DNA of 64,000 bases from Fimbriosthenelais zetlandica (lineage: Eukaryota), in NCBI GenBank assembly GCA_977030845.1, contig OZ365111.1:19592001-19656000 (forward strand), written 5' to 3'. This document shows positions 53,901 through 63,899 of this stretch, in pieces. Every line of letters begins with the position of its first letter. Position 1 is the first letter of the stretch. A program made the translations under genes and the position numbers. Under the pieces are notes generated by a model, which made no database searches, had not been told where the DNA came from, and was given only the letters and a program-made list of their open reading frames with translations.

Positions 53901-55291
53901 AATGAATGTGAACGGGCAAATGTCATATATTTATCAGGATTTTACATAGAAAGGCGTCAAAATTATTTTCTTTTTTTTGTTTTTTGAAGGATAAAATCAA
54001 TTTCGGCCAATGTAAATTAAAGCCACATAAAATGTCATAAGAAAAAAATAGTTCCGGTCCGTATGGAACGGGAGTTCCATACGGAAAACCGTATGGCACC
54101 CCCCTATATGGCACTTTCAGATGGAATGCGCATATAATAAAATTACGTATGCTCTAGTAATATCAAATCATCTACTTTGCTTCTCCATAGTCCCTTTAAA
54201 AATATGGCACGTCCCCGAGAAATAAAGGAGCCTTTGCCAATGATTTATTAATAAGAATTTCCTTTTTGTATGATTGTCTTATTTAGGTTTATAGTTCACA
54301 GTGATGAGAATAATCCTTATCTACGATCGATGGAATCCTTCATGGAGGAGGTGCTGATCTTTTCTCCCAATTTACTTGTAGTCAGCGGACTACAAATGAT
54401 GGATAACTTCCCTTTTGCCCCCGGTAAAAATTTCGATTTTAGTCATTCAGAAATTCTACAGTTGTCTGCTCGAATTAACAACAAAGGATTATAATTACAT
54501 CTTGACGTTTTAAATATTTGGAACAATAGTGATTAATTTGTGTGGCATTACACTTCAACCAGTGCGTAAATTTATGCACTGTTCTTTCTAATGAATACTG
54601 GCAACATATATGATTTTTTTTTTCAGGCGAGAGGCTGGATCGTTTACTGAAGCTCGAACGGTTCCTTCAAACCGTCCCCCAAGACACCCTCATGCATTTT
54701 GAACTGGCCTCCTTTGCTGAAGAATCCTGCTTCCGTGATGTGGTCGATAACGTTGTCTACCACGCAGATTCCTTAGGCATGAACGAGCAGGAGCTTCCCA
54801 ACCTTCACAGTATTCTCACCAACGGTTCAGTCAAACTCATATCAGATCCTTACCCTAGGATAGCTACCAGCTTAGACCACATGAGGGCGGTGTACAAAAT
54901 CCTCCACCAGAGACCCTTAGGTAAAGGTGAGCGCCAAGTGAGCAGGATCCATGTCCATACCCTGGCCTACCAAGCCATCATGACAGCCAAAGGTTCCGCC
55001 TGGAAAAATACCATGTCTGCTACAGCCAAGGCCTCGCTCACTGCCAACCGGCATGTATGTGGCTCCAACTTTATTCACACCGACAAAGCCCGTCTACTCA
55101 TGGATGAGTCGTTTAGCACGAGTCGTGAGGATGGGAATAGAATGCCCTTCCAGGCTGATCGACCAGTGTCCTGCTGGAGTGAGGACGATGTTGAGATCTG
55201 TGTGGCTCCGAATTTAGTTTGTACTGAAGTGGTGCAGACAGGAGGAGGCGGAGATAATATCTCATCCGCTGGACTTGTACTTCAAATTTAG
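50988..55291 (+). CDS. ADPGK: ADP-dependent glucokinase; exons 50988-51307, 51554-51744, 52732-52828, 54287-54423, 54627-55291
   Basis: N-terminal hydrophobic anchor; motifs VAVGFGACED, LGGNAPVMA, DDIHLLLEY, APRANRFIVHSD, LVVSGLQMM, HFELASF, DSLGMNEQEL, RIHVHTLAYQ and ribokinase-family GGGDNIS. Exon phases are consistent (exon-2 donor is the non-consensus GTGCAC). Confidence 0.96.
51882..52655. mobile_element. About 775-bp MITE with 24-bp terminal inverted repeats in ADPGK intron 2
   Basis: Left GGGGAGGCCGGGAGAGTTGGGCCA; right-end reverse complement GGGGAGGTCGGGAGAGTTGGGCCA (1 mismatch); internal subterminal copies of GAGTTGGGCC/CCCAACTCTCC. Confidence 0.85.
52885..53045. mobile_element. About 160-bp fold-back (hairpin) element in ADPGK intron 3
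   Basis: About 70-bp arms AGAAATGGAAC..GACAGCAATATGGCGGGAATAATGGCAC..ATCGTTTGTGCGGATGAATATGGGAC inverted around loop GAACCGAAGGTGA. Confidence 0.85.
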
Positions 55292-57205: not shown

Positions 57206-60200
57206 ATGAAGACGGACTATATTCGTGGCAATCTTTTTCTCCTATTAACAACAATTGCTGGATTATTTCTTTCGCAGTGTGGCCGTGTATTTTGCGATTG
57301 GGAGTTGAAAGGGACTGCACATGTGACATCATGCCTGGCCCTGGGACCAGAGGCAGAGGCAGGGAAGAAAGAGAGGTCAAAAAGCCAGAGTTATCTAGAG
57401 AACTGCAGGCGAGAAGTAAAAATTCATGTTGACATGAAAAATATTGGAAAAGTATGTGTTATATACTAACTTCTCTGAAATTTATCATGCCTCATTAAAG
57501 AAATATTGGGAAATTCGTTTGGTCTGAAAAGACAAAACTTTGTCAAAAGTCTCACTCTGGCAGTCTGGGCAAGTGCCAGCAGAGAGTGTAGCCGTAGGAA
57601 GATTATCCTACACTCGTTGGTGCCAGTGCCAGTGCCAGTGGCCAGTGCCCTGGCCTTGGTGGCTTTGTTGTAAGGTCTTGTTAGGCCTACTTGTAAATCT
57701 AACGATAAATTTTTGTATACCGAATTATATAACATACGGTACATGAATAATAATAATTATTTATAATTTACAATTATATTTATCAGGTACAGAATGAGTC
57801 TGGGTTTATTCTAATCAAAGACGTCTTTGATGAAGCCGTGAAGAGCCAGGTCAGGTTGCTCAACCCACTAGTGCTCAGAGTGAAACAGAATCATTTGCTA
57901 TGGAATTATCCATTCAAACATATTGTGGTAAGATTACTCCATTGAATGATTTATTCCTATTTTCCTATTTTCTAGTTTCATAATACTAGTCCTACAGTTA
58001 CATTGGACTACATGGAGAATGAGTTTAAAAGTTAAAAGCCAGCATTAATTAGAAATGCATGATGGCATGGTCTTTTTGGTTAGCATTTTCTTCATACACA
58101 TGTACAGAATTTTTCTTGTAAATAACCCTATGTCTATGCAGCACAGTGAATTCATTTTTGCATTCATATCTAACTCAGTCTGTCAACAACAAACCATATG
58201 AAGCAGTATACCACCATGAGACATCTGATACAATGGTAGCACAATGTGACTCAAAGGGTATCACTGACACAGCCTGCGTGGAGGACCGACGTCCTGGGTC
58301 AGCCCAGCCAGTAAGTTTAAAATTCATAATAATTTTGAATTTAGTTGATTTATACTTCAAATCTTTAAAAAATGGTGAATATTAATTAAGCTCAGTTGAA
58401 GATATGTAGTGTATAGGCGTACGTACGTATGCTTTAACAAATCTAAAGAAGGTGAATGAACAATTAGAGGTTTATTATTAAAAATTCAGAATAAATACAG
58501 TGTAACACTGTGAATTTCCCTTACTACCATAGACACTACTACTGAGTTATCATAAAAGCTAAATAGCTAAAACCAAACCAGATTATAAAATCTATCATAC
58601 CGGTATTTGTATAAATTACAGTGTTTAATACCTTTCCCATTGCATGCTCTATAGGGATTCTGCTGCTCTTGTGATAGGCATACTTCAGGGGAAAATGAAC
58701 GTCTGCGAGGTGGACAGACCTGCGGTGGGAAAGAACCCCATCTGAGCATACATTGTCTACGATTCGACCCTCTTTGGTATGCTTCATACAATCTACTGAT
58801 ATCTTTCTTCGAAAAAATCAATATTTTTGTGAATTATTTTTCTTTTCTATTTACAGGTATTCAGTGAATAATATGAGTGAGGGGATCCTAGATCATAGCC
58901 TTAGTCTTGGAGTGTATTTAAGATCGGACATACCTGGTGGCAATCCCAAGTGGATGTCTTTAGCCGATTCTGAGGAGATAATACTGCAAACCCTGAAGAA
59001 CACTTTTGAAGCGAAGAACAAAAAGGCAAGTGCTTCATTGATTGATTTTCGACTTAAGCTCCATAATCAATGGATGATATTTGATTTTTGATTTTATGTC
59101 TATATTATTGTTTTTCATTTTATGAGACAGATTCACGCAGTATATCAACAGGTGTCATTTCCTAAAAGAGGTCCTCTCAATGCAGCAAGTGATTATCTTC
59201 TCATCCCTGAGCCAATTGCAATAGCAAGGCCTGAAGGTGTACATAAGCAAATTCAAGTGAGTTCAGAGTAAATAATTTGGAAATCAATACAAAATTAGTT
59301 GTTCAATGATATTATCTTAGAAAAGGGAGGTGTACTAATTTTTTTAAATGTTTATACAGTACTAGAAAACTTTCAGAAAATTTTCTTATTTTATCTTTAG
59401 GCTGGACCAGAGGAATACTTACTAATAAAGAAAGGAATGCTGACTGAAAGTGGATCCGTTTGCGGGAAAATAGGTGTTAAACATGCAGCCTTTATAAATC
59501 AGAAGAACAGGTGCAACCTCCTCCCCCAAAGGTATAAATGTAGGAAAGAATTATAACCAGATTTTTATGATATTTATCGATATTATCTCACTACATCAAT
59601 TTATAACTAGTCATAATGTTACCAGTAATCATTAATAATCCCATTTCCCCTGCCAGACTAAGCTTTAAAACTCCACTAAGCCATTATAATATCATCATGA
59701 CATACCCAGGAGAGTTTTACTAGACATCCTCACACCTCAATGATAAACCTCGTTAAATCAGGCAGCGTTTATCTTTAGAGATCAAGTATTCAGTTGCATT
59801 ACCATTCTGATGATTCATATAGAATAGAATTATAGGAATATACTGAATCTATAACCTCCTGTCCAGCTCGCCAATTACAATCAGCCAAAAACCTGTGTAC
59901 ATAACAAAACCCTCTGTGAGAGAAAGATGTGTATTGAGAGGCAGACTGAAAATCATAGATGAGTACCAAAGTTACAAAAAAAATACATAAAATATTTACA
60001 CAAAAACTTAATATATAAATCATTCGTTTCTTAATGCCTGTTACTCTATGTTAAAATAAACTTTGAAATTTAAATATTTCAAAAATTAACTTTTTGACAT
60101 AATTCCTCAGGCAAGGACTAAGTGCTTTCCAAATGTAGAAAAAATAAAATCTTTAGTTCTAGGCCCATAGACACCAACTCCACACCTAAATCCATCTTTT

Positions 60201-61748
60201 AGTAATTCCTATTCCACTATGTGTAAAGTGAACATTTTCAAACTTCTTTCTACACTCTTGTCTCTATGCAAGGAGTCTCTAGTAGGCCTACTTAATTACT
60301 GTCACAACACGGCCCTTCTAATCCTTCAGTCCTGCACCCACCCAGCCAACCTGTTACCATGGCAACTGGAGTTAGTCACCCTAGACCTGACCATAACCCC
60401 TGGACCACACCACTAAGCACTCACCAGTTAGAGTCTCCCCCCTAGACTTGACCACAAACCCCTTGGCTATATTTATTCATTATTCTTTTGGATAATCACT
60501 TATTGTGTCAAAGTAATCAATTTCAGGCTAATGTTTTTAAATATGAGAGAACAAAACTAAACTCTGGATAGGTCTTACAAATTGTAGATTCAGATATTCT
60601 CTATCTTATACTTAACTTAATTCTCTCAGTGCCAGGAGAGGCATATAAGTTTCACTGTTACATGTGGACTCAAATGCTTCAATTACCAGAGATGTTTCAT
60701 TGCTTTCATTCAAAAGAAGCTGAACATTTCATTTTGCAATCAATCTTCTCATTAAATAGAGGCCAAATGTTGTTATGATTGACCAGCAGAGTTATTCACT
60801 GAACAGTTCAAATACACAATAGGATTAATGAAAGAAAGACTTAGGCAAGTCTCTCTCCAATAATCCTGACCCCCCTCCAAGTTGCCAGTGGAGGGCGGGG
60901 GGCTGCTGCAGGTGCTACCTTGACCCCTAGCTCCAAGTGACTTTGACCTTTGTCTTAAATTGTGTGTATTGAAAAGTATAAATAGAAAAAAATACTGAAC
61001 TGCATAATGCAATACATGTATGCAAAGGTCTATTTTTGTGCTTTTTTTGTCTAGTACATACTAAGCTCTATCTTTAAAAATAAACTTGCCAGAGTGAAAA
61101 AACATGAAAATATTGACCAAAATGGAAAATATTAAAAAATTCATAACAAATCAACTTATGAGTGGAATGCATAATGCGATATAGGTATCAACAGCTCTTT
61201 TTATGTACTTGAATTCATCTAATTCATTTTAAGCTTTATCTTTAAAAATAAACTTGCTGAATTAAATAAACTGAAAATATTAGGTTAATTAGTTTTTACA
61301 TCACTGTAACGTCATCTTACGTCGTTTCAACCAACTACAAAATATATTTCTCATATATGCCTCACCCACTGACTGCTCATGAACCACGTGTTATCACTCT
61401 TGAATATTTTTAATCTGGCCGAAATAGCATTTAAGTGATTTCATACCCCTGACCTAATTCCATGTAACTAATTAGGTCAAAGGTCAAATATGTAGGTCAA
61501 CTTATAGTCCATCATGTATCTTTACACTACATACCATTCATCTTATTCTAGATCCGCATGGGTCCAAAAAAATTACAATCAAATTTTACCAATTTGGCTG
61601 CTTTGGTGACGTCATATGACGTCATGTGATGACGTATGACATCCATTCATCACATGTGACCACTCCTTACTATGGTCTACAATATGTGTGAAAACCAGAT
61701 TCCTACCTCTAATATAAACCCGTTTTTCATCAAAAGTCTAACTACAAC

Positions 61749-61793
<45 letters not shown>

Positions 61794-63899
61794 AAAAAAA
61801 AAAATAATAGTGTAGAACAACGAGCACAAAATCTAAAACCCCATTTTCCCCATAAAGGGGAAATGGGATTAATTATTTTTCCTATATTTAATTAAGAAAT
61901 TTCTTTCTCTTCAGCTGTCTTGACAATCAACCTAATGACTTTTGGTCGCACGATAAGGTAAGAAGGCTCCTGCAATAATATTCATTCCAGGAACTCATGA
62001 TGCATGAAATAATCGAACCTAAAATGTTCATTCAAAAGAGATACATGTATTGTTAAAAAATCTCCCATTTATTCATTCTAGGAGAAGACTGACAAGAGTA
62101 AACGCAAGTACTTTCTGTCATCTCGTGGCAATCTGGCTGCAGACGCTGTCTCATTGCCGCGCGGGGGACAACCTGAGAAATCTGTACAATTTGCGTTTGA
62201 AGACACATTGGTGAGTAAGATACAGCTCGAAATCAACGCTGAAAGACTGACACTGCTTCACCCTGGGTAAGTTCTGACCATTGGACATCAGATTATCCTA
62301 TAGGAATAAAGTGGTTCTTAACTATATAGACAAAGGTGTAGAAATGTCTTGCAAAAATTGATTGAATCTAAGTAGTATATGGAATCTACTGAAGACGCAG
62401 GCAAAAATATTTGTAAGTAGTATAATGAAACTGGAAATCTTTACAGGGAATGATGAGTATAGAGGCATGTGCTGCTTTCAAACTTCCTACTAAATGATAA
62501 AATTTCTTGTAAACTATTAAAATTGTATTAAAATCACATTCTTGCAGATCACATGGGGTTTTGATTGAGGCATCCAGTTGGAGTCGTACTGGGAGCGTGC
62601 TGATCATGGTTCACTTTCAGAACAGAGGTCTGGTCGCTGAGAACTTTACAGTTCAGCTCACTTCATGTACACATGATACAGCCAAGTTCACATCCAAAAT
62701 TCTCAAGGTTGCACCCCATCAGTCTAATCGGGTTGCTTTTGTGCTTGAACCACTAAGGAAAAGTGCAAGCAAGGCTGCATGTCTCGGTATGAAAAACCAA
62801 ACTGAATTCATTTGGTCCAACCGGACTGGTTATGAAAATCCATTTTTTTCGTCCAGACATGGGAAAATGAGAATGGTATTTTTAAACTTTTACTATGCAG
62901 ACAAACTGTATAGGTCTTTGTAATATTTTCCAGTTGGACTACTGAACCACAACGAGAAATTGATTGCTTATAGAGAAATTACGATGAATATTTTTGATCG
63001 ATGCTTCTGCATAGAGATGTGCCAGTGCTCCGTGAGTATATATATCGGGAAAATTAAATGTTTAATACTTCAAAAATCATGTAGAAACTCAAAATAATAA
63101 AAATCGACAGTGTAATTGATAGAAAATGGAAAGTTATGCACTTAATAAATAAAATTTGTATAATTCTCAGTGCGTCAGAGATGGAAGATACGACTGTAAA
63201 ATGATGTCACGGGATATGTATCAAAAAGCTGGATTTAGAAATGTCTTGCCAAGTAAGATACAAGCGCCCCGGGTACAACCAGCTGCAGCTCTCACTTTAG
63301 AAATAATATTCATCTTCCTACTCGGCTTCCTCTTAATAGGTATGTCAGATAGAATTTATCTCCAAAATATAAACCAAATAAAATTTCTCGGATTTTGGAA
63401 AAGCCTAATGGGAGTAATCATAAACATTTTCACCCAAAATAAAATATCATAAGGCTTCCAATGTTTATGATAATCATATTCCACTCTTTAGGAATAATAA
63501 AGATGATTTTGGGGATCTACTGCTCAGTGCGCATTGGCCAGTTTGGACTCGCATTATGCTACAGTCATAACGTCAGGTAAATTGTGGATGGGGACATATT
63601 TTCCAATATTTTGAAAAAGAAATATTAATCACGGATAAAAGAATGCGTTTGGTTCCGCCTTGTATGATTTGGTTTTGTTGGCTAGAGGCAGTTTAAAATA
63701 TATTATATTTCTTTATAGAAGGCAAGATGAACATGCAATGCCCTTATGGAAAGAAGCACTCGTGAATGTGTTCTTTGTCTTCTACGTATTCATCTATCCC
63801 CTTCATCTCTTGGCCACCAAGAAAAACTTTTTCTTATTACGTGATAGGATAAAGGTAGATCATGAAAGATCAAAAAGATTCCTGACAATTTTGAATTGA
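57206..63899 (+). CDS. HAP2: HAP2/GCS1 (Hapless 2) fusexin, about 688 aa, 14 exons: 57206-57451, 57787-57927, 58179-58310, 58655-58776, 58857-59025, 59131-59256, 59401-59531, 61915-61957, 62082-62266, 62548-62786, 62934-63031, 63171-63339, 63492-63576, 63719-63899
   Basis: All junction phases match and lengths sum to 2067 nt (689 codons including stop). Signal peptide; hallmark motifs NNKPYE, GFCCSC, RLRG, HCLRFDPLWY, CGKIGV.HAAF.NQ.NRC, SCLDNQP, KIQLEINAE, Ig-like domain III with N.GLVAENF, Cys-rich stem CFCIEMCQCSC and C-terminal hydrophobic segments. The last exon could instead splice beyond the window. Confidence 0.92.
61330..61815. mobile_element. Repeat-derived insertion ending in a poly(A)-rich tract in HAP2 intron 7
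   Basis: AGGTCAAAGGTCAA and GACGTCAT-rich motifs typical of non-autonomous Helitron/Helentron-like elements of marine invertebrates, then about 50 nt of near-pure A at 61752-61803. Family assignment is uncertain. Confidence 0.35.

What the first reader, a model, noticed from the sequence alone, without database searches (positions are those of the whole stretch)
58655..58776. HAP2 fusion-loop region is very short and lacks bulky hydrophobic residues
Seen: exon 4 reads GFCCSC-DRHTSGENE-RLRGGQTC-GGKEPHL-SIHCLRFDPLW. The candidate structural Arg (CGA 58706-58708) and partner Glu (NNKPYE, GAA 58200-58202) are kept, but the two intervening loops are only about 9 and 7 mostly polar or charged residues. 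Established: in Chlamydomonas and Arabidopsis HAP2 these cd-loop segments carry Trp/Phe/Leu/Ile amphipathic helices that insert into the target membrane, whereas nematode EFF-1 has a polar tip and acts bilaterally. Inference: this HAP2 may use a non-canonical, possibly bilateral or partner-dependent mechanism, or may no longer be a fusogen.
Basis: partly seen in the sequence, partly recalled or inferred. Interest (0 to 1): 0.7.

Follow-up and report, generated by a model that had tools for sequence, protein, structure and literature searches.

The report
HAP2 sperm fusogen with polar tip
This animal's single, intact copy of the ancient sperm-egg fusion gene HAP2 keeps the framework that holds its membrane-piercing loops. 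The greasy residues that do the piercing in every studied HAP2 are gone, so it probably grips the egg membrane in some other, still untested way.

Summary
Window 58655-58776 (+) is exon 4 of a single-copy, 14-exon, 688-aa HAP2/GCS1 gene (57206-63899). This one exon encodes strand c, both cd loops and strand d.

**Scaffold kept**
- Glu137-Arg191 pair
- all 14 conserved ectodomain cysteines
- the ij-loop signature

**Fusion-loop residues lost**
- The GFCC-to-LW segment is 41 aa here. It is 43 aa in T. cruzi, 46 in C. merolae and 56 in Chlamydomonas.
- The positions of the experimentally defined membrane-inserting residues of the solved HAP2s are deleted here or hold Gly, Thr or other polar residues.
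- Only Met148/Val149 in the bc loop stay non-polar.
- Among 44 distinct HAP2 cd segments, none from an animal, this one is the most polar. It has no aromatic residue and the lowest amphipathic-helix potential.

**Ruled out:** a hidden exon (both loops lie in one exon) and a second HAP2 copy.

a non-canonical, partner-dependent or bilateral mechanism stays plausible but untested. "No longer a fusogen" is disfavoured by the intact scaffold.

**Not available:** animal orthologues, RNA evidence and a 3D model. Short loop 2 in annelid HAP2 is already published; loss of the non-polar residues is not, as far as I found.

The parts
57206..63899 (+). Whole HAP2/GCS1 gene, 14 exons, 2067-nt CDS, 688 aa. 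Exons: 57206-57451, 57787-57927, 58179-58310, 58655-58776, 58857-59025, 59131-59256, 59401-59531, 61915-61957, 62082-62266, 62548-62786, 62934-63031, 63171-63339, 63492-63576, 63719-63899.
   Evidence: The model was built from splice sites and reading frames. All introns are GT-AG except intron 5, which is GC-AG. blastp of the spliced product covers residues 56-534 against HAP2 proteins, with E down to 3e-31. There is no RNA support, because no sequencing run was listed.
58179..58310 (+). Exon 3: end of strand b with the NNKPYE motif (Glu137 = GAA 58200-58202) and the bc connection. The bc connection includes the FL3/variable-region-1 equivalent HHETSDTMVAQ, with Met148/Val149 just before Cys152.
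   Evidence: Alignment to C. merolae-like and trypanosome HAP2 and to PDB 5OW4/7S0K. There are 14 residues between Glu and Cys here, against 9 in T. cruzi and Chlamydomonas and 17 in C. merolae.
58655..58776 (+). Exon 4 (the finding). It runs: strand c (GFCCSC), cd loop 1 (DRHTSGENE-RL), Arg191 (CGA 58706-58708), alpha0 remnant (GGQT), Cys196, cd loop 2 (GGKEPHLSI), strand d (HCLRFDPLW).
   Evidence: It is the only copy in the 447-Mb assembly.
59401..59531 (+). Exon 7: first part of the ij-loop / classical PF10699 signature (C333-GKIGV-..AF..Q346..C350).
   Evidence: Pfam positions 250-286 at 28.4 bits. PDB matches to 7S0K, 5OW4, 5MF1 and 5OW3. Alignment.
61915..61957 (+). Exon 8: second part of the ij-loop signature (C357-L-D-N-Q361..D-F-W).
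   Evidence: Alignment. Conserved columns C357, L358 and Q361 are kept.
62548..62786 (+). Exon 10: domain III core.
   Evidence: Pfam PF10699 positions 384-446 at 27.5 bits. Own-genome hit L003.
63171..63339 (+). Exon 12: stem and start of the transmembrane helix. The hydrophobic stretch covers residues about 579-616.
   Evidence: Kyte-Doolittle 19-residue window, maximum 2.95.

Best explanation
**Shown.** Exon 4 encodes the complete fusion-loop segment of an intact, single-copy HAP2/GCS1 gene of an invertebrate. Other notes of this scan, which I did not check, call the animal a worm. The conserved framework that positions the loops is kept. That framework is the Glu137-Arg191 pair, the disulfide cysteines and the ij-loop signature. 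The loops themselves are cut down to 9 and 7 polar or charged residues.

**Inferred.** The protein still works as a class II-type, trimer-hairpin gamete fusogen. Its domain II tip cannot anchor by inserting bulky non-polar side chains. Contact with the egg membrane is therefore most likely shallow and mainly polar. It would use lipid head groups, perhaps with divalent-cation bridging through its Asp, Glu and His residues, and/or a partner protein on sperm or egg. The few remaining aliphatic residues (Met148, Val149, Leu190, Leu203) would add only a little. On this reading it sits at the polar extreme of the already known hypervariability of the HAP2 membrane-contact surface.
For: **Family identity**
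- Pfam PF10699 is matched above cut-off by exons 4, 7 and 10.
- PDB HAP2 matches.
- Full-ectodomain blastp to HAP2s.

**Intactness**
- Clean 688-aa ORF with consensus splice sites.
- 14 of 14 highly conserved ectodomain Cys columns are kept, as are E137, R191, Q346 and Q361.
- Single copy in the assembly.

**Loss of insertion residues**
- In the alignments, C. merolae L194, L195, L210 and L211 fall in gaps.
- L197 and F213 align with Gly.
- W147 aligns with Thr.
- Only L148 aligns with a non-polar residue, Met148.
- These eight residues were shown by mutagenesis to be needed for trimer formation in C. merolae (PMC9279424).
- The Chlamydomonas residues W173, F177, F192, W193, L197, L200 and I201 fall in insertions absent here (PMC6327110).
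- T. cruzi L167, L168, I183 and F184 have no non-polar counterpart here. T. cruzi V129 corresponds to Val149/Met148 (PMC6089408).

**Quantification**
- Most polar of 44 distinct cd segments, with the lowest hydrophobic moment.

**Precedent**
- The HAP2 tip is highly variable, and deletions in loop 2 are known in annelids, cnidarians and sponges.
Against: - No structural model could be made or inspected, so the exposure of Met148/Val149, Leu190, Leu203 or the ij-loop Leu352/Leu353 at the tip is unknown.
- No orthologue from any animal could be fetched. It is therefore unknown whether the polar loops are conserved (functional) or a recent change.
- No RNA data were available, so neither expression nor the splice model is confirmed.
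- T. cruzi HAP2 binds liposomes with only five modest non-polar residues per protomer. A shallow canonical insertion cannot be excluded.
- The head-group, cation or partner idea has no direct evidence here.
- The comparison set contains algae, plants and protists only.
Confidence: 0.45

Rival explanations
1. Canonical unilateral insertion with a minimal, shallow non-polar patch, as proposed for T. cruzi HAP2. Met148/Val149 (bc loop), Leu190 and Leu203, multiplied by three in the trimer, would suffice to hold the egg membrane.
For: T. cruzi HAP2 has a cd segment only 2 residues longer. It uses V129, L167, L168, I183 and F184, and its ectodomain decorates liposomes. Val149/Met148 sit at the V129 / C. 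merolae L148 position. Viral class II proteins can anchor with one or two bulky side chains plus head-group contacts.
Against: There is no aromatic residue and no apical aliphatic residue in either cd loop. Leu190 and Leu203 align with positions outside the fusion loops defined in C. merolae. Ile205 aligns with the conserved, probably buried, Ala of the SAHC motif. The segment has the lowest hydrophobicity and lowest hydrophobic moment of 44 sequences.
Confidence: 0.2
2. EFF-1-like bilateral mechanism. HAP2 is present on both gametes and fuses by trans-oligomerisation, without inserting into the opposite membrane.
For: The polar, net-acidic tip resembles the acidic cd loop of EFF-1, which acts bilaterally (PMC8784728). 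Arabidopsis HAP2 worked only bilaterally in heterologous cells, and Tetrahymena needs HAP2 in both partners.
Against: No expression data were available. In Hydra, HAP2 is restricted to spermatogenic cells (PMC2766252). The tip here has mixed charges rather than being uniformly acidic. Sequence membership is HAP2, not the FF family.
Confidence: 0.1
3. The gene is a relic, or has taken on another role such as adhesion, and no longer drives fusion. Loss of the non-polar loop residues would reflect relaxed constraint on the tip.
For: HAP2 was lost from most bilaterians. 21 of 64 highly conserved columns differ here, including the near-invariant GDF motif, which reads Q277-V278-S279. No close relative was found among 1.84 billion representative proteins.
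Against: No stop codon or frameshift occurs across 14 exons, and splice sites are good. All structural cysteines, the Glu-Arg pair and the ij-loop signature are retained. That pattern is not expected under neutral decay.
Confidence: 0.15
4. Artefact: a wrong exon model or an assembly error hides the true hydrophobic loop sequence.
For: There is no transcript support. One intron uses a GC donor, and the 3' end of the model is uncertain.
Against: Strand c, both loops and strand d are contiguous inside one open exon. That exon aligns end to end with Pfam PF10699 and with 7S0K. An in-frame stop lies directly upstream, and intron 4 is only 80 nt. No second exon-4-like sequence exists in the genome.
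Confidence: 0.03

Closest known systems
Trypanosoma cruzi HAP2 (PDB 5OW4; Fedry et al. 2018, PMC6089408)
   Same: Very short cd segment (43 aa against 41 here) and no amphipathic fusion helix. The bc connection is thought to reach the level of the tip. Same Glu-Arg pair, cysteines and ij-loop signature.
   Different: T. cruzi keeps L167/L168 at the apex of loop 1, I183/F184 after the Arg, and an extra disulfide in loop 1. Here those places are deleted or polar, and only the V129-equivalent (Met148/Val149) is non-polar.
Cyanidioschyzon merolae HAP2 (PDB 7S0K; PMC9279424)
   Same: Best sequence match for exon 4 (49% identity). Same NNKPYE, R-x-RGG and HCLRFD-LW motifs. Three-loop layout (FL1, FL2, FL3).
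   Different: Eight mutationally validated non-polar residues (L194, L195, L197, L210, L211, F213, W147, L148). Here four of them are deleted, two are Gly, one is Thr and one is Met.
Chlamydomonas and Arabidopsis HAP2 (PDB 5MF1/6E18/6DBS, 5OW3)
   Same: Same family and same scaffold. R185-E126 corresponds to R191-E137, and Q379 to Q346.
   Different: They expose ten (Chlamydomonas) or four (Arabidopsis) bulky non-polar residues on fusion helices. Here there is no helix-forming amphipathic stretch: maximum hydrophobic moment 0.27 against about 0.8 in Brassicaceae HAP2.
C. elegans EFF-1 (FF family fusexin)
   Same: A class II-type fusogen whose cd loop is polar or acidic and is thought unable to insert into lipid (PMC8784728). 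This is a functional analogy for a polar tip.
   Different: A different family by sequence; only HAP2-GCS1 is matched here. EFF-1 is somatic and bilateral. The tip here has mixed charge, is rich in His, and keeps the HAP2-specific Glu-Arg salt bridge.
Annelid, cnidarian and sponge HAP2 as aligned by Fedry et al. 2018
   Same: These are reported to have significant deletions in variable region 3 (cd loop 2), as here.
   Different: Their sequences could not be fetched, so residue content could not be compared. For Nematostella an amphipathic helix was predicted in the variable region. None is predicted here.

Membership tests
HAP2/GCS1 (Pfam PF10699) | Match to the family profile above the curated cut-off | tested here: met
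   Exon 4: 28.5 bits. Exon 7: 28.4 bits. Exon 10: 27.5 bits. Cut-off 27.4. The own-genome search gave 33.6 bits.
HAP2/GCS1 (Pfam PF10699) | Conserved ectodomain cysteine pattern (disulfide framework) | tested here: met
   All 14 ectodomain Cys columns conserved at 98% or more in 50 HAP2s are Cys here: C43, 67, 152, 162, 176, 177, 179, 196, 207, 333, 350, 357, 472, 510.
HAP2/GCS1 (Pfam PF10699) | Strictly conserved Arg (cd loop) and Glu (strand b) salt-bridge pair | tested here: met
   R191 and E137 occupy the invariant columns. The bond itself is inferred, not modelled.
HAP2/GCS1 (Pfam PF10699) | ij-loop signature C-x-K-I-G-V ... A-F-x-x-Q ... C ... C-L-x-x-Q | tested here: met
   C333, K335, I336, G337, V338, F343, Q346, C350, C357, L358 and Q361 are all present.
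HAP2/GCS1 (Pfam PF10699) | Type I membrane protein: signal peptide, large ectodomain, one C-terminal transmembrane helix | tested here: inconclusive
   The N-terminal hydrophobic leader was judged by eye. There is a strong hydrophobic stretch at residues 579-616. A second, weaker hydrophobic stretch (641-662) in the modelled tail, and the unconfirmed 3' exons, leave the topology open.
HAP2/GCS1 (Pfam PF10699) | Non-polar fusion loops or helix at the domain II tip, required for liposome binding and fusion in all studied orthologues | tested here: not met
   At sequence level the apical residues of both cd loops are polar or charged and include no aromatic. All validated insertion positions of four orthologues are deleted or polar, except Met148/Val149.
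HAP2/GCS1 (Pfam PF10699) | Three-domain class II fold and post-fusion trimer | not testable with these tools
   The spliced protein has no reference and was not typed, so it could not be folded. Only sequence alignment across residues 56-534 supports the fold.
HAP2/GCS1 (Pfam PF10699) | Male-gamete expression and requirement for gamete fusion | not testable with these tools
   No DNA or RNA run was listed for this stretch.
FF family (EFF-1/AFF-1) | Sequence membership in the FF family | tested here: not met
   hmmscan of the exons against Pfam-A returned only HAP2-GCS1 for the fusogen exons.
FF family (EFF-1/AFF-1) | Bilateral requirement (fusogen needed in both membranes) | not testable with these tools
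   This needs expression data and fusion assays.

The most novel reading that the evidence does not exclude
A bilaterian HAP2 has given up hydrophobic insertion altogether. It would fuse gametes through a polar, His- and acid-rich tip. That tip might bind a protein receptor, bind lipid head groups through divalent cations (as Ca2+ does between the two fusion loops of rubella virus E1; recalled from memory, not checked here), or act in trans like EFF-1. This would be a natural intermediate between insertion-type and EFF-1-type fusexins.
Probability: 0.3. Interest if true: 0.75.

Novelty: new variant of a known kind. Interest (0 to 1): 0.5.

Why it matters
HAP2 is the only known broadly conserved gamete fusogen. 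In every orthologue studied so far, a hydrophobic domain II tip is required for membrane binding and fusion.

A naturally polar-tipped but otherwise intact HAP2, in one of the few bilaterian lineages that kept the gene, would do two things. It would provide a natural test of whether hydrophobic insertion is obligatory for this class of fusogens. It would also point to unknown partners or cofactors in animal fertilisation.

If the residual aliphatic residues turn out to suffice, the gene instead defines the minimal membrane anchor that a class II fusogen can work with.

Tried and rejected
**Searches for relatives**
1. phmmer of the domain III exon against 1.84 billion representatives gave only two low-complexity non-HAP2 proteins. 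Neither the window's own protein nor any close kin is in that library.
2. The search for homologous proteins with the exon-4 open frame was blank. The length filter allows only 39-122 aa.
3. To obtain a long query by reference I scanned metagenome contigs with an exon-4 alignment. This gave 14 loci, mostly red-alga-like. I used the 708-aa ORF of L013 as query. I then used a mixed alignment that included the window's exons as rows. These searches gave 58 HAP2s from algae, plants and protists, and no animal that I could recognise. P0046, the only comparably polar one, lies on a gene-dense, intron-poor contig next to a histidine-biosynthesis gene, so it is not from an animal.
4. The viral-contig scan found nothing.
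5. The ESM Atlas look-up of exon 4 gave scores of 0.79 or less and was uninformative.

**Reads**

6. The look-up of sequencing runs listed no run, DNA or RNA. Two earlier attempts were unanswered. Read laying therefore could not be used.

**Structure**

7. Structure prediction, trimer modelling and fold search were left out. The spliced protein has no reference, and I did not type a long sequence. The tool also returns no coordinates from which to inspect the tip.

**Other checks**

8. The weak exon-4-like hit on contig C22 (E = 0.75) has no HAP2 motif and is chance.
9. The supplements of PMC6089408 hold accession numbers only, not sequences.

**Considered and rejected**
- A cassette exon in intron 3 or intron 4 supplying loop residues. 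It is impossible for the cd loops, and the bc junction aligns without a gap.
- A paralogue with canonical loops. None exists in the assembly.
Full report
**What is at the coordinates.**

Window 58655-58776 (+) lies between an AG acceptor (58653-54) and a GT donor (58777-78). The peptide matches Pfam PF10699 (HAP2-GCS1) positions 115-157 just above the curated cut-off. It also matches residues 157-202 of the solved Cyanidioschyzon merolae HAP2, PDB 7S0K.

**The gene.**

From reading frames and splice sites I built a 14-exon model, 57206-63899, with a 2067-nt CDS and a 688-aa product. It has no internal stop. Thirteen junctions are consensus GT-AG or, for intron 5, GC-AG.

- The product aligns with HAP2 proteins over residues 56-534, with blastp E down to 3e-31.
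- Exons 7 and 10 also reach the Pfam cut-off.
- Exon 7 matches all solved HAP2 structures.
- A six-frame search of the whole 447-Mb assembly with PF10699 and with exon 4 finds only this locus. One weak hit elsewhere carries no HAP2 motif.
- The gene is therefore single-copy, and no paralogue with canonical loops exists.

**The scaffold is kept.**

I aligned the product with 50 HAP2s from red and green algae, plants, trypanosomes and unidentified protists.

- All 14 ectodomain cysteine columns conserved at 98% or more are Cys here.
- The invariant strand-b Glu is E137, encoded by GAA 58200-58202.
- The invariant cd-loop Arg is R191, encoded by CGA 58706-58708.
- The ij-loop signature is present: C333-x-KIGV, F343, Q346, C350, C357-L, Q361.

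In Chlamydomonas the equivalent Arg185 bonds Glu126, Gln379 and ij-loop carbonyls, and so holds the two fusion loops out towards the target membrane (PMC5332557). Overall 43 of 64 highly conserved columns are retained. One notable loss is the near-invariant GDF motif, which reads Q277-V278-S279 here.

**The loops.**

Profile alignment against the PDB printed the homologous segments of the solved HAP2s. From GFCC to LW the segment lengths are:

| Species | Length (aa) |
|---|---|
| This window | 41 |
| T. cruzi | 43 |
| C. merolae | 46 |
| Chlamydomonas | 56 |

The experimentally defined membrane-contact residues, and what stands at those positions here, are:

| Orthologue | Validated residues | Source | What stands here |
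|---|---|---|---|
| C. merolae | L194, L195, L197 (FL1); L210, L211, F213 (FL2); W147, L148 (FL3, bc loop) | PMC9279424, | L194, L195, L210, L211 fall in gaps; L197 and F213 align with Gly185 and Gly198; W147 aligns with Thr147; L148 aligns with Met148 |
| Chlamydomonas | W173, F177, F192, W193, P196, L197, L200, I201 | PMC6327110, | All lie in insertions that this protein lacks |
| T. cruzi | V129, L167, L168, I183, F184 | PMC6089408, | Only V129, two residues before the bc cysteine, has a non-polar counterpart (Val149/Met148) |
| Arabidopsis | I171, F172, M175, I176 | PMC6089408, | In the alignment of Brassicaceae HAP2s most of the fusion-helix segment falls in a gap here |

The three aliphatic residues inside exon 4 probably do not sit at the apex.

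- Leu190 is next to the conserved Arg.
- Leu203 is two residues before strand d.
- Ile205 is at the conserved Ala of the SAHC motif.

The loop apices DRHTSGENE and GGKEPH(L) are polar or charged. With the bc stretch HHETSD, the tip region holds four non-conserved His and six acidic residues.

**Is this unusual?**

Among 44 distinct cd segments the window stands out on each measure.

- It has the least favourable Wimley-White interfacial sum, +11.6 kcal/mol against 8.9 or less for the others.
- It has the joint-lowest favourable contribution, also when the bc loop is added.
- It has no aromatic residue.
- It has the lowest hydrophobic moment, 0.27 against 0.34-0.84.
- It has the lowest maximal 7-residue hydrophobicity.

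One protist HAP2 (P0046) comes close, but it keeps Val, Ile and Leu in loop 1. With an ectodomain ILMFWYV frequency of 0.30, one or fewer such residues in the 16 apical positions has P = 0.025.

The comparison set has no recognisable animal. This is the main weakness of the test.

- *An extra exon.* It cannot supply loop residues. Strand c, both loops and strand d are one uninterrupted exon. An in-frame stop lies directly upstream, and intron 4 is 80 nt.
- *Hydrophobic residues from another loop.* This is only weakly met. The bc loop is 5 residues longer than in Chlamydomonas or T. cruzi (14 against 9 residues between Glu and Cys). It carries Met148/Val149 at the FL3 position.
- *The ij mini-loop.* It has Leu352/Leu353. 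In the solved structures this element underpins the cd loop rather than reaching the membrane, and other HAP2s also have non-polar residues there.

**What could not be done.**

- No sequencing run, DNA or RNA, was listed for the gene. Expression and splice junctions are therefore unconfirmed.
- The window's protein and its close relatives are absent from the protein libraries.
- The three homologue searches reached no recognisable animal HAP2.
- The spliced protein has no reference and I did not type it, so no model was made.

**Mechanism.**

*Shown:* an intact HAP2 scaffold with a polar, short tip.

*Inferred:* the protein is still a class II-type fusogen, because neutral decay would not spare every structural cysteine, the salt-bridge pair and the ij-loop signature across 14 exons.

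- Without bulky non-polar residues, stable insertion as seen in algae and plants is unlikely.
- I favour (0.45) a shallow, mainly polar contact, by head groups, cation bridging or a protein partner.
- The rivals are a T. cruzi-like minimal insertion (0.2), a relic or neofunctionalised gene (0.15), an EFF-1-like bilateral mode (0.1), and an artefact (0.03).

Other notes of this scan call the animal a worm. They also mention a DC-STAMP-like candidate fusion protein elsewhere in the genome. These are unchecked leads only.

**Novelty.**

- Extreme variability of the HAP2 tip is published, as are deletions in loop 2 of annelid, cnidarian and sponge HAP2 (PMC6089408).
- A 2022 review still states that the hydrophobic tip is critical regardless of species (PMC8784728).
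- I found no description of a HAP2 lacking non-polar residues in both cd loops.
- I rate it a new variant of a known kind, of moderate interest until orthologues, expression and a model are examined.

Noticed in passing
window 54614-55288 (+): A long open exon upstream of HAP2 encodes the C-terminal half of an ADP-dependent glucokinase/phosphofructokinase-type protein (Pfam PF04587, E = 7e-74). It is the neighbouring gene on the same strand.
   Followed up: partly
window 59026-59130: Intron 5 of the HAP2 model uses a GC donor (AAG|GCAAGT) instead of GT. The frame and the homology across the junction fit, but there is no transcript evidence.
   Followed up: partly
window 59149-59157: The G-D-F motif, which is 86-100% conserved in the 50 compared HAP2s, reads Q277-V278-S279 here. 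This is a second marked departure from the family consensus, away from the tip.
   Followed up: no
window 63753-63818: The modelled cytoplasmic tail contains a second hydrophobic stretch (residues about 641-662, Kyte-Doolittle maximum 2.0). This is unusual for a single-pass HAP2. Exons 13-14 are the least certain part of the model. Read-through of the exon 12 donor would give a different short tail.
   Followed up: no
window 61600-61810: Inside the 2.4-kb intron 7 there is a cluster of TGACGTCA-like (CRE-like) palindromes (about 61605-61650), followed by a 50-nt poly(A) tract (about 61755-61806). It may be the remnant of a retroposed or mobile element.
   Followed up: no
L020:3001-4875 (protein P0046): An unidentified intron-poor protist HAP2 (Logan SRR22388183) has the next most polar cd segment in the sample, with a fully polar loop 2 (DNGPKQ). 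Polar cd loops may therefore occur more than once in the family.
   Followed up: partly
window 62549-62785 (+): The 79-aa domain III exon has no significant match among 1.84 billion representative proteins, apart from two low-complexity false hits. This HAP2 lineage appears to be unrepresented in the protein collections.
   Followed up: yes
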